From Euprymna scolopes (taxonomy: Eukaryota): a stretch of DNA of 64,000 bases. Of the stretch, positions 1,241 to 46,976 are shown in pieces; position 1 is the first letter of the stretch; each line of letters opens with the position of its first letter. A program made the translations under genes and the position numbers. Under the pieces are notes generated by a model. It was not told the DNA's origin, made no database searches, and saw only the letters and a program-made list of their open reading frames with translations. The DNA lies in NCBI GenBank assembly GCA_053919585.1, contig CM132797.1; one strand, written 5' to 3'.

Positions 1241-1303
1241 GCAATTAAGCTACACAGAATATTCCACGTTTCATTCTCGTGTGAATTCGTCAGGCTTAAT
1301 TGC
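1241..1303 (-). ncRNA. Type I hammerhead ribozyme, intact core
   Basis: Minus strand: GCAAUUAAGC-CUGACGA-AUUC(acacga)GAAU-GAAA-CGUGGAAUAUUCUGUG-UA/GCUUAAUUGC; perfect 10-bp stem I, GUA cleavage triplet. Confidence 0.85.
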
Positions 1304-6085: not shown

Positions 6086-6144
6086 GGCACATATAGAGAG
6101 TGGGGAAAAATCGTATATAGTGGATGTAACGATAGAAAATAACG

Positions 6145-6196
<52 letters not shown>

Positions 6197-6200
6197 TCAT

Positions 6201-6244
6201 CCGCATACAGTACTGTTTCGTTGTATCACAACTCATCAGTGCGG
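6201..6244 (-). ncRNA. Minimal type I hammerhead ribozyme, canonical
   Basis: CCGCA-CUGAUGA-GUUG(ugaua)CAAC-GAAA-CAGUACUG-UA/UGCGG; all core nucleotides present, palindromic stem III. Confidence 0.92.
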
Positions 6245-6267
6245 CTAGACAAACACCTTTCTCCAAC

Positions 6268-6326
6268 CGTGGATTGAACCTACAGCCGTCGCATTGACAG
6301 TCGGCAGCTCTCACCATCGGCTACGA
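6268..6326 (-). promoter_or_regulatory. tRNA-derived (Asp-like) internal Pol III promoter
   Basis: A box TAGCCGATGGT, anticodon-like CT-GTC-AA, B box GGTTCAATCC; no complete cloverleaf. Confidence 0.7.
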
Positions 6327-6524
6327 ATCAGTGCCTTAAATATTTCTCCTAGAGTGTGTATTAAATCCACACCCTCCCGTCGCAAAATGCTCGAACCATC
6401 AGCTTGTTTACAAACAAATTAATAGTGGGCTTCGCTTAATCGCTTTAAATATGCGTCGGGTGAAAATATATTTACAAAGTGCTCAACCCAAAGAGGGGAG
6501 GGGGCTTTAATTGTCATCCACACC

Positions 6525-18313: not shown

Positions 18314-18403
18314 TTACATCTAATAATATTTTGTAAGGCCAAAAATCACTGGATTAGCATAACAGCAGATATATTTTACTTCATTATTCTAAAGTGTAAA
18401 TAA

Positions 18404-18431
<28 letters not shown>

Positions 18432-18434
<3 letters not shown>

Positions 18435-18811
18435 TATTTACAATAATAATTATTAAATACCAACAGACACTAGTGTTTCATCCTTTTGGGAATCATCAGT
18501 GCAGGCTGTCACGATTGATGCTAGTCGATAGATTCAAACAACAGCAGTCATGCCTAGCCTCATTAACAAGGACCTTAACCATTCGGCTACCGTCAACCGA
18601 GAGAGATACAATTGAAATTTTACATTTATTCTTATTAAATGCTTTCAACGTCAGTCAGAGTGATCTAATCATTATATGACGATCTGCGCGTATTAGCTAA
18701 GTTGACCGACTTTATTACAACTGGAAGTCCTCAACGATAAGAAACAAGTTTCTTAAAGGGGATGACATTATTATTTACTATAATAATTATTAAATACCTA
18801 CAGACACTAGT

Positions 18812-18815
<4 letters not shown>
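18432..18815 (-). mobile_element. Retrozyme-like unit: 337-bp period, tRNA-like head and minimal hammerhead
   Basis: Terminal direct repeat (18432-18478 vs 18769-18815); A box TAGCCGAATGGTTAAGG on minus at about 18575-18591; flanked by (TA)n on both sides. Confidence 0.75.
18460..18505 (-). ncRNA. Minimal type I hammerhead ribozyme
   Basis: CCUGCA-CUGAUGA-UUCC(caaaa)GGAU-GAAA-CACUAGUG-UC/UGUUGG. Confidence 0.82.
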
Positions 18816-18868
<53 letters not shown>

Positions 18869-19229
18869 CAAACAAGGCATATATAAAGAAATAAAAACAT
18901 GCGGTAGCAATTTTCAGAACAATAAATAAACTGCCGCCCTNNNNNNNNNNNNNNNNNNNNNNNNNNNNNNNNNNNNNNNNNNNNNNNNNNNNNNNNNNNN
19001 NNNNNNNNNNNNNNNNNNNNNNNNNNNNNNNNNNNNNNNNNNNNNNNNNNNNNNNNNNNNNNNNNNNNNNNNNNNNNNNGTAAGGGGGTTAAGATATCCA
19101 CGTATGCTTCTTGAATAGTAAATTCAATGAGTTATTTTGGAGCATAAAAGGTTGTTGTTTCTTTTATATTTCAAGCGATCCTCCGCTCATGATCACTAAA
19201 AAGTAGCGAAATGAAAATGTGCGTATTGA

Positions 19230-35009: not shown

Positions 35010-35268
35010 CATTGGATACCCCTATAAGGGGTGGTTGCGCGTGTAATTGGGATTGTATAATCTTCGACCACACCTCTCCTGAATCGGCATTGCTTGAATC
35101 TAGTGGCAAGGAGAAATCCAGGACCACTGGTAACAATGCCGGGATAAGCAGAGAACACATACCACATATAGAATTCCAAATGGTTACCCATTTTAGTACC
35201 GACCAGGATCAACGTTTCTCAACATCGGTGATCTAACGGGAACGGTGTGTCAAAGTGATTATGGCGTA
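35010..35268 (-). mobile_element. 5S rRNA-derived SINE (SINE3-like) or 5S pseudogene with a structured tail
   Basis: 35156-35268 minus: TACGCCATAATCAC...GATCACCGATGTTGAGAAACG...GTACTAAAATGGGTAACCATTTGGAAT aligns by eye with 5S rRNA. Confidence 0.75.
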
Positions 35269-37317
35269 TTTTGAATGTATAAATAAATAGAAAAGAGTCT
35301 GATCAACAAAGCCTGACTGTAGTGTAGTCTGATATAAGAAGGATGGTGTAACAGATGTGTAGATATAGTCGAACGACTAGGTAGAGATATTAAACAATTA
35401 TCTTCTTTCAGATCAGGTAAGATTAAGAACCATTCCCATTTAGAGACCAAGATGGTCTTTTTCGGTCATAAGTTAATTTGAAAACATTAAACTTTCTATT
35501 ATTTAGCAGTGTCATACTGGTTAGTGTTTTTATCTTTAAACTGCCGATTAATTTACGTAAATTTTACTGATCAGTATTATCTTTCATCTCAAGTAAGTAT
35601 TTAAAATTGTTAGTTTTTCTTCCTTTTTTTTTCAGTAGCGATATTTTATGTGGATGTAAGCATGCGGAAACACTCAGCACGTTGTTTAATATTCTGATTA
35701 ACTGAACTTATAATTAACTGAACAAGTTACGATCTCCTCCTTTGTATCTATGTATTTTTTGGCCTATATAATGTACTGACTCGGTCATTCTTTATTATTT
35801 TAGAATCTTAGCATTTAGAAAAGAAGTATGTCAACCTTGTAAGCTAATTTAAATAGTGTGTTCAAAAACACGTCATGTCATAATCACGTGTGCATATCAG
35901 TTCACGGTAGATAACGGAAGTTAAGCATCGTAAAGCCTAGTTGGTACAAACATAGGTGACAGTTTCGGAAATACAAAGTGCCGTATATGGTCTTCCATTT
36001 TATCGGCATTGTTTCTAATCTTCATTACCGTCTTCTTGCCATTCGAATCAAGCACTTCCGACCCAGGAGAGAAATAGTTAGTGATTGCGCAATTCTTGCT
36101 TCTCAATTCAGTGCGATCATTAGATGGTCTTCGTCGTTCCCATGAACAAATGGAGCACGTGTGCGAATCAAACAACAAAATAGAAGTCTTTTTACTTTTA
36201 TATATCCACTAGCAGATAGATCCGACATTGCCGATATTGAATAAGATAAACACATTTTTCGCGCCATACTTTTATTTTTCATCGAAATCTGTGATATTGC
36301 CCATCTTTTCAATCAAACCGATTGATTGTCTAGCTAAGCGATCCACCGAAGTACACCGTGAAGAAGCTTCACATGCCTCCTGGAATTTTAATCCATAATA
36401 CATCGTAGTCTACATTGCACTGTAGAGAATCCACCGTTGATTTTTGTAACATTAATTTAATACTATAGCTTTAATGAAAGTTTAAAATGAAAAAGTCAAG
36501 TATCATTGTTCAATTGTGCCCAAAGCAAAAACATTCATCTTTAACTCGCTTATCCTTTCAAAGTACCTACTATTGGTTTTATAAAAAGATTATTTTATAA
36601 AATGGCTTGAATTAAAGTTCGAAATTCAAAAGTTAGATATCATGGCCCAATTGTGTTCTAAATCGAAGCATTCATTTCGAACGCGCTACTGTCCTAATAA
36701 AAAATAAAAACTAATGTTAATTTTGTATACCGGCTCTTTTTGTTTGTGTGATGATAAAACTGCTCAAATGCACTTGTGGTGTAAGGCGTTATAAGGGTGT
36801 CATCTGTGATAAAAATCGGACTGTTATTTATTTAATTGGATTTGTTGAATTATCAATCTTTGATACTTTTCGAAGGCATTCAAATACAAGCTCTATCTAA
36901 AAACGAAGGAACTTTCTAAGGACCCGATAGTAGAGAGGTGGAATTTTGCTGTTTGTCTTGTTTGTATATTAACAGAGGAATAAGTGCTACGAGTTCATCA
37001 TTCCATTAAAATCAAAATACTTGTAAAACGTGTGCGATCTTGCAACATTGTGGCCATGGGACAGAATTTGGAGCTTGATTGATAGTTCAGTACCCATTAT
37101 CATTTCTGGCCCCATATTCCATCCCGATTTTCTGGTTTATTTTTCAATAACCCCTTTTTTTCTAACATAGAAACTGTTTTCTTTGTTTTTGGTTCTTAAA
37201 ACAATACGCAAAACAGTGAGCAGTACATACGAAGATAAATTGGTATTATTCTACTACCTAGCACACTTAACATTTTATTGTCAGCGATGCTTGTTGTTTT
37301 TCCATACTTTCGTCCGT

Positions 37318-45078: not shown

Positions 45079-45151
<73 letters not shown>

Positions 45152-45205
45152 AGTGGTGAAAATACTAGACTAGAGTGCTCAATGTGTAGCCAGAGCAGTA
45201 TATAA

Positions 45206-45421
45206 GAAATTTATTACTGTGAGTCCAGAATGAGTTTACATATTGTTTCAGCTAGAGGAAAATCCTCAAAAAGAAGAAAAGATATCCGACTAGCATCGTC
45301 AGAATTCATAGATGGCCCATCTATGAATTCTGACGATGCTAGTCGGATATTTGCTCTTCTTTTTGAGGATTTTCCTCTAGCTGAAACAATATGTGAACTC
45401 ATTCTGGACTCACAGTAATAA

Positions 45422-45426
<5 letters not shown>
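45206..45426. ncRNA. 221-bp near-perfect palindrome made of two head-to-head hammerheads
   Basis: 110-bp arms, 1-nt centre (45316), 4 mismatches; each arm reads AUGAAUU-CUGACGA-UGCUAG...CUAGCU-GAAA-CAAUAUG-U(A/G)/AACUCAU. Confidence 0.8.
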
Positions 45427-45474
<48 letters not shown>

Positions 45475-46925
45475 TCCTATATATTTAGGGTTTTTTATAT
45501 TGATATTCATGCGCACTGTTATAAGCTCCACTCACATATAAAAAATTTGTTAAAGGTGATAACGTACGTACAAATACAAAAATATGTGAAAGATTAAAAC
45601 CTAGTCTAAGCATTAATGCGTGTGAAAAAGTATAACGTATGTAGAAAGATTAACGGTAACCCCTCACTCGAGAGAAGGTGGTTAAGGACTCTTATTTCTC
45701 TAGAATTCTCGACTCGTGTCATCTAGTCTCCTCTGAGGTTGTTACCTGAAATCTGGTATGCTGAAAGCGAATATCGAAGCGGCAGGCAGGAAGAAATACA
45801 AACAATTGTAGTCTATCTACAGAAGCTTAATTTTCACAAAATTATGTACAAAAATGTTTTTACAATTCTCATTCAATTCGTAGTAAGTTTTTCCAAAGTC
45901 TCAAATCTCTTCACAGACACGACAGACGGTTGGATGAGGTAGGTGGAGGGGGCCCCTCTCCAGGGAATGGCAGGTTTATACGACCTGTTCTCCTCGAATT
46001 CAACAAGCAATCCGTTTAATTTTAGAGCGCATCGACCCGATGTGGGAGTGGTGTAAGTCTAACCAGCCAATCAAATCACGCTAAACCCCAACTATCTGAG
46101 ACCCCATTCAAGACTAAAAATCCCATAACCTCGAAGTCATCAACCATCACTCAGCCAGTACGATATGTTCAGCTAACATCCTCGCATTTCCTGTTATTGA
46201 GTTTTCCCCAAATAACAAAATATCTCAGGTCTTCCAACCCCCAAAAAAACAACAAATATATCCATTTTGACAGTGAATTAAAATATATCTATATTTATCT
46301 TCTCTATCTTAAATCCTTGGTTTATCTGGCGTCACCCGGGAATACAAAGCTACCTCAGCGTAGTTCTAACGCTCCTCAATGGGGGATTACGTTACAGCCT
46401 GTAAAAAGTGATTCCGTGTGAAAGGTGATAATGTACGTTCAAACATGAATGTATGTAAAGGTTCTCCTTTTCGAGAAGTGAAATTTCTTGTTATACGAGA
46501 AGTTAAAAATATTTCTTTTGGGGATATTCTCTGCTCTATCCAGGATATTAAGCATTTGGATTATAGCTCCATCTAAGAGCTTTGGGCAATTCTTGTACTT
46601 ACGGAGACCTCAAGAGCACTACTAAAACCAATTTTCTAATCCAACCCCTAGAAAAGAAATTATAAACATTATTAGTGAAAAAAATAGAAAGCCTGCAGAG
46701 CGCTATTTAAATCGCTAAATATAATTAAATATACCTCCAGTGTATAACTAAACTAGGTGCCCCTTTTTTTCCTTGTAATTAAAAACATAAATAAATTCAC
46801 ACAAAATATTTTTCGACTTCATTTCAACATGAAATGTTTGCTAGAAATGATATCGTGACGTTAGAATTTCAGACAATGACATTGTGACAAGCGATCTTAC
46901 AGAATTTTAGAATTGTATATATATA

Positions 46926-46959
46926 TGATGAGTCCTAGACGACGAAACACGTGTCAGTG
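46926..46959 (+). ncRNA. 5'-truncated minimal hammerhead within (TA)n
   Basis: UGAUGA-GUC(cuagac)GAC-GAAA-CACGUG-UC/AGUG; C3 and the 5' strand of stem I replaced by TA repeat. Confidence 0.7.
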
Positions 46960-46976
46960 GATAATTATATTTGAAA

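What the first reader, a model, noticed from the sequence alone, without database searches (positions are those of the whole stretch)
45150..45426. Near-perfect 221-bp palindrome that is a head-to-head hammerhead dimer
Each arm encodes a type I hammerhead pointing outward. Of only four arm mismatches, one hits the cleavage triplet: GUA in the minus-strand copy and non-cleavable GUG in the plus-strand copy. The cassette is (TA)n, leader with the AGTGCTCAA hairpin, palindrome, (TA)n. A read-through transcript would form a 110-bp dsRNA that sequesters the ribozyme (a possible siRNA source or switch), while initiation at the centre would expose it. It could arise by snap-back priming during reverse transcription.
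Basis: partly seen in the sequence, partly recalled or inferred. Interest (0 to 1): 0.85.

Follow-up and report, generated by a model that had tools for sequence, protein, structure and literature searches.

The report
Head-to-head hammerhead retroelement insertion
The palindrome is real, but it is one of thousands of insertions of a small non-coding, Penelope-type jumping element of a 5.9-Gb mollusc genome, which lands in TA repeats as two mirror-image copies that each carry a hammerhead-ribozyme motif. It is a new family of a known kind, and this copy is an inert relic.

Summary
Observation confirmed. Arms 45199-45315 and 45317-45433 are 117 nt with 5 mismatches. Each arm carries a complete type I hammerhead (HH) motif facing outward: GUA on the minus strand, GUG on the plus strand.

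This is not a unique cassette.
- The genome holds at least 4,795 such arms.
- Arms pair only with their 3' ends outward.
- Almost every pair has its own centre junction (26 different among 28).
- Truncated arms always lose their inner part.
- The two arms of a locus share subfamily variants.

So the palindrome is rebuilt at each insertion and is not inherited from a palindromic master.

(TA)n is the insertion target. The 49-bp "leader" is the one-sided "tail" known from Penelope-like elements (PLEs). PLEs are published as inserting into AT-rich DNA or (TA)n as inverted 5'-truncated copies, from two reverse-transcription start sites, with both target strands extended.

The HH motif is far beyond chance and has PLE traits. 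Its activity is untested. I found no footprint of cleavage, and an apparent one proved to be an artefact. GUG is a private post-insertion mutation.

The dsRNA, siRNA or switch function is unsupported. The scan had already found similar palindromes elsewhere in this genome. Verdict: new member of a known kind.

The parts
45080..45149 (.). (TA)35, left part of the target microsatellite
   Evidence: Sequence. All 30 copies printed from the first sample are flanked by (TA)n on the tail side and 29 on the other side (L021 lacks it). The DNA beyond differs from copy to copy.
45150..45198 (-). It is the 3'-terminal extension of the sense RNA, present on one side only, and contains a short stem-loop.
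   Evidence: In loci L001-L060 it is present at one end of the pairs and at both ends only in L034/L035. Genome-wide there are 839 tail-bearing and 2,461 tail-less arm ends. It matches the PLE tail that lies between two reverse-transcription start sites (PMC11167929, PMC8557442).
45199..45315 (-). Left arm: a copy of the short RNA, sense on the minus strand, truncated 3 nt short of the family's 5' end (+1)
45220..45315 (-). HH motif, minus-strand copy. CUGACGA is 45302-45296, GAAA is 45249-45246 and GUA is 45239-45237. The predicted cut lies between 45237 and 45236.
   Evidence: Descriptor hit. Three private substitutions in distal helix II.
45316..45316 (.). Centre junction (CATAGATGG C CCATCTATG), private to this copy
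   Evidence: 26 different junctions among 28 parsed copies.
45317..45433 (+). Right arm: a tail-less copy of the same RNA, ending in TATATA that merges with the target (TA)n
45317..45412 (+). HH motif, plus-strand copy. CUGACGA is 45330-45336, GAAA is 45383-45386 and GUG is 45393-45395. G at position 17 is a private mutation and is expected to block cleavage.
   Evidence: The majority of arms have GTA (92 GTA against 4 GTG).
45434..45473 (.). (TA)n, right part of the target microsatellite

Best explanation
The locus is one old, dead insertion of a non-autonomous retroelement that carries the 3' module of a Penelope-like element (PLE). Reading the sense RNA from its discrete 5' end (+1, AGUCCAUC), the module has these parts in order:
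- an HH motif whose helix I starts exactly at +1;
- an AUG formed by A9, a bulged U and G10.1;
- the predicted cut site at +79/+80;
- a first reverse-transcription start site at about +117;
- a 49-nt tail, then a second start site at about +166.

Shown:
- Insertion goes into (TA)n.
- In most insertions two copies are laid down with their 5' ends joined at the centre and their 3' ends outward.
- The join is made anew each time, with 0-3 nt of microhomology or short filler.
- The two arms come from the same source variant.

Inferred: the two 3' ends of a cut (TA)n target each prime a cDNA on the element's RNA, one from the distal start site (tail) and one from the proximal site (no tail). The two cDNA ends are then joined. 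This is what the in vitro behaviour of a PLE enzyme predicts.

The HH is inherited from the PLE module. It is probably a weak, perhaps protein-assisted ribozyme in the source RNA (about 40% that it cleaves measurably). The RNAs that gave the full arms had not been cleaved. In this copy neither arm has a promoter of its own as far as can be seen, and the plus-strand copy is disabled by G17. Any read-through transcript would simply fold into a hairpin of about 117 bp.
For: Family and flanks:
- At least 1,363 first-look candidates. The top 40 are full length at 88-95% identity.
- (TA)n lies on both sides of 29 of the 30 copies printed, and on one side only in L021.
- 4,795 arms match an exact 24-mer across the cut site.

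Architecture:
- A sample chosen by the tail gave pairs, single arms that run on into a longer non-coding element (homology for at least 900 bp), pairs with a shortened second arm, and one pair with two tails.
- 26 different junctions among 28.
- No arm of a pair runs past +1.
- Shortened arms lose the inner part and never the outer part.
- Arms of one locus agree at 88.5% of polymorphic columns, against 52% between loci. Identity is 96.0% against 91.3%.
- On contig C1 there are 17 close (-,+) pairs among 100 arms and no (+,-) pair.
- On C1-C2 there are 17 one-tail pairs, 1 no-tail pair and 0 two-tail pairs.

PLE context:
- 15,395 GIY-YIG candidates.
- The L080 ORF has RVT_1 plus GIY-YIG.
- That PLE family also ends in (TA)n, with or without a 29-nt tail, and has an HH-like motif about 60-120 nt (without or with the tail) from the end.

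Literature:
- PLE insertions are 5'-truncated and often carry an adjacent inverted copy, a 30-40-bp tail at one end and a (TA)n preference (PMC8557442).
- A PLE enzyme cuts and extends both strands and starts reverse transcription at two internal sites that delimit the tail. HH cleavage is not needed for insertion (PMC11167929).
[quoted passage not shown] Pairs of motifs on opposite strands have been seen (PMC4209133).

HH:
- The descriptor hit is far above background.
- The majority RNA folds into the three-way junction. The HH-constrained fold is only 1.8-2.3 kcal/mol above the minimum free energy.
- Subfamily changes at the base of helix II keep or improve pairing: G-C/G.U, and U.U to A-U.
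Against: - No autonomous element sharing this 3' module was found. 30 GIY-YIG loci, apparently dominated by one PLE family (the six whose 3' regions were read were near-identical), show no sequence similarity to it. Mobilisation by a PLE therefore rests on the insertion signature only.
- The excess of one-tail pairs is not explained by independent choice of start sites, and exact-match detection may bias it.
- HH: there is an extra U between C11.1 and G12 (or a U.U pair at 10.1/11.1). Helix III is only 2 bp with a non-palindromic loop. There is no Rfam hit, no compensatory double change, and no excess of 5' ends at the predicted cut site.
- RNA libraries hold family contigs, but these show neither ends nor strand.
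Confidence: 0.8

Rival explanations
1. One cDNA, snap-back. A single cDNA reaches the RNA 5' end, folds back on itself and copies itself. The palindrome comes from one priming event.
For: Junctions such as GGACT+CTATG and GGACT+ATG leave a small loop and use 0-2 nt of microhomology, as self-priming would. Reverse transcriptases are known to self-prime (established knowledge).
Against: A copy of a tail-bearing arm should also carry the tail, and a copy of a tail-less arm should lack it. Yet 17 of 18 pairs scored have exactly one tail. In several pairs the arm that is complete to +1 is the tail-less one while the shortened arm carries the tail (L038, L049, L017). A PLE enzyme extends both target strands in vitro (PMC11167929).
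Confidence: 0.12
2. Palindromic master or foldback MITE. The whole unit (leader plus palindrome) is the mobile unit, moved as DNA with a TA target duplication, or as one RNA.
For: TA flanks fit a Tc1/mariner-type duplication. The first sample of 30 copies looked uniform in a multiple alignment.
Against: Junctions differ in nearly every copy. Single arms run on into a longer element, and there are inverted pairs at other break points (L041). Shortened arms always keep the outer end. The ends are asymmetric, with the tail on one side. Subfamily variants are symmetric in both arms. No transposase link is known.
Confidence: 0.04
3. Functional hairpin locus. The palindrome is kept as a source of dsRNA or siRNA, as an RNA-editing substrate, or as a ribozyme switch.
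For: A read-through transcript would form a hairpin of about -190 kcal/mol. Family sequences occur in poly(A) and oligo-dT RNA libraries.
Against: Both arms of this copy decay independently: 5 private differences, including the cleavage triplet. Thousands of similar copies exist with random junctions. The differences seen in RNA contigs are family polymorphisms. No small-RNA or editing data could be laid on the locus.
Confidence: 0.04
4. Assembly or amplification fold-back artefact.
For: Palindromes are a known artefact class.
Against: There are dozens of independent loci with the same architecture but different junctions, and the arms differ within each locus. Contigs of independent runs cover arm, centre and tail pieces.
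Confidence: 0.01

Closest known systems
Complex insertions of Penelope-like elements (Penelope/Poseidon, Neptune, Naiad): inverted 5'-truncated copy plus one-sided 30-40-bp tail, with AT-rich or (TA)n targets (PMC8557442, PMC11167929)
   Same: (TA)n target, 3' ends outward, variable 5' junction, a tail at one end delimited by two start sites, an HH just upstream of the start sites, and an AUG at the start of helix II.
   Different: The element here is short (117-166 nt per arm), non-coding, and has a discrete 5' end. The two arms are therefore near-complete and give an almost perfect palindrome. The tail is 49 bp. Pairing is the majority form. The autonomous partner is not identified.
Hammerhead motifs of PLEs (min-HHR and variants; Cervera and de la Pena 2014, PMC4209133; PAc HHR, PMC11167929)
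   Same: Type I topology, intact CUGANGA / GAAA / UH core, an unpaired base after A9, a long helix II and a short helix III. Motif pairs on opposite strands were noted in Schistosoma.
   Different: There is an additional U before G12, so the first helix II pair is U.U in two subfamilies and A-U in a third. Helix II is 46 nt and three-part. Helix I is long (about 12 bp with an internal loop) and closes at the RNA 5' end. The helix III loop is not palindromic.
Animal non-LTR retrozymes and Schistosoma Sm-alpha (PMC7229834; bioRxiv 10.64898/2026.07.22.740005)
   Same: Non-autonomous, HH-bearing, abundant, and proposed to derive from PLE terminal sequence. tRNA-headed examples sit in this same window (18380-18900, 6100-6400).
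   Different: Those are head-to-tail arrays that give unit-length or circular RNA. This family is mainly head-to-head, has no tRNA-like head, and its HH sits at the 5' end of the unit.
L1 twin priming (5' inversions)
   Same: The second target strand primes on the same RNA, which gives an inverted segment.
   Different: Twin priming inverts non-overlapping parts of the RNA. Here both cDNAs cover the same stretch and make a true palindrome.

Membership tests
Hammerhead ribozyme, type I | Conserved core: C3 U4 G5 A6 N7 G8 A9, G12 A13 A14, A15.1-U16.1, H17 not G | tested here: met
   Met in the family majority and in the minus-strand copy. The plus-strand copy has G17.
Hammerhead ribozyme, type I | Three helices around the core, with helix I open | tested here: met
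   Helices I and II appear in the unconstrained minimum-free-energy fold of the majority RNA. The full HH fold is 1.8-2.3 kcal/mol above it. 97.7% of cells are paired over 49 arms. Helix III is only 2 bp.
Hammerhead ribozyme, type I | Helix II stacked directly on the core through a 10.1-11.1 Watson-Crick pair | tested here: inconclusive
   U/U flanks the stem in two subfamilies and A-U in a third. A bulged base after A9 is usual in PLE HHs (PMC4209133). I did not find the extra U before G12 described.
Hammerhead ribozyme, type I | Covariation supporting the helices | tested here: inconclusive
   There are no double compensatory changes, only one-sided compatible ones such as G-C/G.U. The result equals the shuffles because the family is young.
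Hammerhead ribozyme, type I | Match to curated covariance models | tested here: not met
   No Rfam HH hit at E<=10. The models also miss the PLE 3' end of L080, so this is a weak negative.
Hammerhead ribozyme, type I | Self-cleavage after H17 | not testable with these tools
   An indirect test found no excess of genomic 5' ends at +80 once G77A point mutants are removed. The RNA runs are kept as contigs only.
Element mobilised by a Penelope-like retrotransposon | Insertion into AT-rich or (TA)n DNA | tested here: met
Element mobilised by a Penelope-like retrotransposon | 5' truncation with an adjacent inverted copy, 3' ends outward | tested here: met
Element mobilised by a Penelope-like retrotransposon | Optional tail at one end, delimited by two start sites | tested here: met
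   A 49-bp tail; 839 tail-bearing against 2,461 tail-less ends; 17 of 18 pairs have one tail.
Element mobilised by a Penelope-like retrotransposon | Head-to-tail partial tandems (pseudo-LTR) | tested here: inconclusive
   Five same-strand arm ends spaced 256-304 bp, followed by an inverted tail-bearing arm, at C1:165075708-165077030. This was seen by coordinates only.
Element mobilised by a Penelope-like retrotransposon | 3' module shared with an autonomous RT + GIY-YIG element of the same genome | tested here: not met
   PLEs are abundant, but the 30 loci fetched share no sequence with this family. kb-scale head-to-head pairs that carry this module are leads I could not fetch.
MITE / foldback DNA transposon | Fixed terminal inverted repeats moved as one DNA unit | tested here: not met
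   The junctions vary, the ends are asymmetric, and single arms run on into a longer element.

The most novel reading that the evidence does not exclude
For this family the head-to-head pair with exactly one tail is the default, concerted product of integration. One RNA with a defined 5' end is copied from two start sites on both strands of a (TA)n break, perhaps by a dimeric enzyme. The genome would then hold thousands of natural records of a Penelope integration step so far seen only in vitro. The resulting perfect hairpins could also feed RNA silencing or editing of the family.
Probability: 0.2. Interest if true: 0.55.

Novelty: new member of a known kind. Interest (0 to 1): 0.35.

Why it matters
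- It explains a striking structure as the scar of a known but poorly understood integration mechanism.
- It offers a large natural data set (thousands of pairs with readable junctions, tails and 5' ends) against which the in vitro model of Penelope integration can be checked.
- It warns annotators that these hairpins draw spurious microRNA-family matches and can upset assemblies.
- It adds one more HH variant to the PLE set. I found no description of such elements at this level in this mollusc lineage; cephalopod papers only list Penelope repeats and Rfam HH counts (PMC6962438, PMC8967140).

Tried and rejected
1. Rfam at gathering and at E<=10 gave no HH. The hairpin gives only spurious microRNA-like hits.
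2. 'Fossil' test of cleavage. (TA)n-abutting 5' ends seemed to pile up at the predicted cut site (TATATA|AACTC). That string also arises from full arms with a G-to-A change at +77. 38 such loci were found, and 28 of the 33 exact hits are these. Only about 2-5 true junctions remain, which is like other positions. I therefore rejected it as evidence.
3. Untemplated (cap) G at the 5' end. In pairs the G comes from the partner arm. Seven of about 48 (TA)n-abutting ends have a G before +1 where the long element has T. This is suggestive only.
4. Intron idea. The long element has a 3'-splice-site-like tract just before +1, but I found no donor or upstream exon.
5. Search for the autonomous partner among 30 GIY-YIG loci: none found.
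6. RNA evidence. The runs are contigs only, with no ends, strand or editing signal.
7. Folding a single arm of this decayed copy without the true 5' end gives no HH fold and no significant stability.
8. No tRNA-like part.

A majority-rule reference of the 284-bp non-coding repeat was used only as a coordinate frame.

Full report
OBSERVATION. The palindrome is as described. Arms 45199-45315 and 45317-45433 are 117 nt and 96% complementary, with one base between them. (TA)35 precedes the 49-bp leader (45150-45198) and (TA)n follows the right arm. Each arm carries, facing outward, CUGACGA, a 5-bp stem that closes a long helix II, GAAA, a 2-bp helix III, U-H and helix I. The plus-strand copy reads GUG (G at 45395) and the minus-strand copy reads GUA (A at 45237). 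A relaxed descriptor that both arms satisfy also picks up a canonical type I HH at 6239-6206(-). It gave 0 to 0.007 hits per simulated 64-kb window. The motif is therefore not chance.

IT IS A REPEAT FAMILY. The window lies in a 5.9-Gb genome, and the run labels say mollusc. The 284-bp unit has at least 1,363 first-look candidates. The 40 best are full length at 88-95% identity. 29 of the 30 copies printed lie between (TA)n runs, with unrelated DNA beyond; L021 has (TA)n on the tail side only. An exact 24-mer across the predicted cut site occurs 4,795 times, with 0 for the reversed control. The family majority has GTA in both arms. GTG in the window's plus arm is private, shared only by L010.

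THE PALINDROME IS REBUILT AT EVERY INSERTION. A sample chosen only by the tail plus the outer arm shows several architectures:
- full pairs;
- one pair with the tail on both sides (L034/L035);
- pairs whose second arm is shortened (L037, L043, L051-L053, L058);
- single arms that run on, past the point where the palindromes turn, into a longer non-coding element (L041, L045, L048, L050, L054, L060). Homology there runs for at least 900 bp, and more appears beyond an internal microsatellite.

Of 28 centre junctions that could be parsed, 26 are different. Shortened arms always lack inner sequence and keep the outer end. No arm of a pair extends beyond one position, +1 (A of AGTCCATC), which lies 16 nt upstream of CUGACGA. 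The two arms of a locus agree at 88.5% of polymorphic columns, against 52% for arms of different loci. Identity is 96.0% against 91.3%. Rare disabling variants such as GGA for GUA (L028) sit in both arms, and so does the +77 G-to-A change (by coordinates: both members of the close (-,+) pairs at C4:114731581/114732080 and C18:13882889/13883003). On contig C1, 100 listed arms include 17 close (-,+) pairs and no (+,-) pair. A palindromic master, a foldback DNA transposon and an assembly artefact are each contradicted by these facts.

ORIENTATION AND THE 'LEADER'. Because truncation is always at the centre, both arms have their 3' ends outward. The leader is thus the 3' end of the sense strand, which is the window's minus strand for the left arm. 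It is often followed by (TAAA)n before the (TA)n. Genome-wide, 839 arm ends continue into this tail and 2,461 end directly in (TA)n. Among pairs on C1-C2 with both ends detected, 17 have one tail, 1 has none and 0 have two. The only two-tail pair seen was L034/L035 on C3. Independent choice would give more no-tail than one-tail pairs, so the asymmetry looks systematic. Exact-match detection could bias this count.

COMPARISON WITH PENELOPE-LIKE ELEMENTS (PLEs).
- Craig et al. 2021 (PMC8557442) describe PLE insertions as highly 5'-truncated and often in partial tandem. They often carry an inverted 5'-truncated copy at the 5' end and a 30-40-bp tail present at one end only, with (TA)n as a preferred target of some clades and HHs in the pseudo-LTR.
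- Frangieh et al. 2024 (PMC11167929) show in vitro that a PLE enzyme cuts and extends both target strands. Reverse transcription starts at two internal RNA sites that delimit the tail. [quoted passage not shown]
- Cervera and de la Pena 2014 (PMC4209133) describe PLE HHs with an unpaired base at the 5' end of a long helix II, low activity in vitro, and occasional motif pairs on opposite strands.

Every one of these traits is seen here, including A9-U-G10.1 reading AUG. The genome is rich in PLEs. There are 15,395 GIY-YIG candidates, many with ORFs of about 806 aa and many in head-to-head pairs. The L080 ORF has RVT_1 and GIY-YIG. That family also ends in (TA)n, with or without a 29-nt tail, behind an HH-like motif. 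It shares no sequence with the present family, so the partner of this family is still unknown. Eight (-,+) pairs 1.0-5.4 kb apart on C1 are leads that I could not fetch.

MOST LIKELY MECHANISM. Shown: the target, the orientation, rebuilding at each insertion, a common source for both arms, a discrete 5' end, and two alternative 3' ends. Inferred: both 3' ends of a cut (TA)n prime cDNA on the element's RNA, one from the distal start (tail) and one from the proximal start (no tail). Both cDNAs run to the RNA 5' end, and their ends are joined with 0-3 nt of microhomology or short templated filler. Simple self-priming of one cDNA fits some junctions. It does not fit the one-tail rule, nor the pairs in which the complete arm lacks the tail while the shortened one has it. 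What sets +1 is not known. A transcription start at the base of helix I is the simplest reading. A splice-acceptor-like tract precedes +1, but no donor was found.

THE HAMMERHEAD.
For:
- The core is intact in all three subfamilies.
- Helices I and II appear in the unconstrained fold of the majority RNA that starts at +1. The full HH fold costs only 1.8-2.3 kcal/mol more.
- Helix I closes exactly at the RNA 5' end.
- Subfamily changes at the base of helix II keep or improve pairing: G.U/G-C, and U.U to A-U, in both arms.
- The layout mirrors the active, protein-assisted HH of PAc.

Against:
- There is an extra U before G12.
- Helix III is 2 bp with a non-palindromic loop.
- There is no Rfam hit, although Rfam also misses the PLE end of L080.
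- There are no compensatory double changes.
- There is no footprint of cleavage.

The footprint test needs care. (TA)n-abutting 5' ends seemed to pile up at the cut site, but the same string is produced by a G-to-A change at +77 in full arms. That accounts for 28 of the 33 exact hits. The remainder is at background level. I put measurable self-cleavage of the source RNA at about 40%. In this locus the plus copy has G17 (expected to be inactive, from established HH biochemistry) and the minus copy has three private changes in helix II.

The two HHs are on opposite strands, so a single transcript holds one HH and its antisense. Such a transcript folds into a hairpin of about -190 kcal/mol, which would bury the motif. 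RNA libraries contain family contigs, including the long form. Those data are contigs and show neither ends, strand nor editing. The differences listed are family polymorphisms. Nothing indicates selection on this copy.

VERDICT. The structure is real and well explained: a new family of a known kind (a PLE-type non-autonomous, HH-bearing retroelement inserted as an inverted pair). Earlier reports of this scan reached the same reading for other palindromes of this genome. The interest lies mainly in the size and readability of the record it leaves of PLE integration.

Noticed in passing
window 18380-18900 (-): About 1.1 units of a tRNA-headed, Sm-alpha-like HH element between (TA)n runs. Its HH (18499-18466) also has U/U flanking a 3-bp helix II and a palindromic ACUAGU helix III loop.
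   Followed up: partly
window 6100-6400 (-): A tRNA-like segment followed by a canonical type I HH (6239-6206: helix II GUUGU/ACAAC, loop AGUACU, GUA), ending in (TA)n. Related copies occur in L033 and L049.
   Followed up: partly
window 46919-46962 (+): A 5'-truncated HH copy abutting (TA)n on both sides. It is the only Rfam Hammerhead_1 hit in the window (23.7 bits, below the threshold of 34).
   Followed up: no
window 1251-1293 (-); L050 about 1880-1990: Another HH-like motif with a 12-bp helix I. It belongs to a different hairpin-shaped family that also sits in (TA)n.
   Followed up: no
L074 about 1300-1520 and its mirror: An inverted pair of yet another short element (CUGACGAGAUG...GAGAAAC) between (TA)n runs, next to a PLE 3' end.
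   Followed up: no
L075, L080, L068, L067, L074, L088 (3' ends): An abundant autonomous PLE family (RVT_1 + GIY-YIG; ORFs up to about 808 aa). It ends in (TA)n with or without a 29-nt tail. Several copies lie head-to-head, for example C12:14496712-14504984.
   Followed up: partly
G000 C1:165075708-165077030: Five same-strand tail-less arm ends spaced 256-304 bp, followed by an inverted tail-bearing arm. This is a head-to-tail array of this family, seen by coordinates only.
   Followed up: no
40 loci listed: The tail plus outer 38 nt of the long-type subfamily is 100% identical in at least 40 copies. This suggests very recent activity.
   Followed up: no
window 45273-45361: The palindrome centre gives spurious matches to microRNA families (mir-1253, MIR172; E about 1e-5, far below gathering scores).
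   Followed up: yes
window 35151-35272 (-): A 5S rRNA-like match of 30 bits (threshold 38). It may be a 5S pseudogene or a 5S-derived repeat.
   Followed up: no
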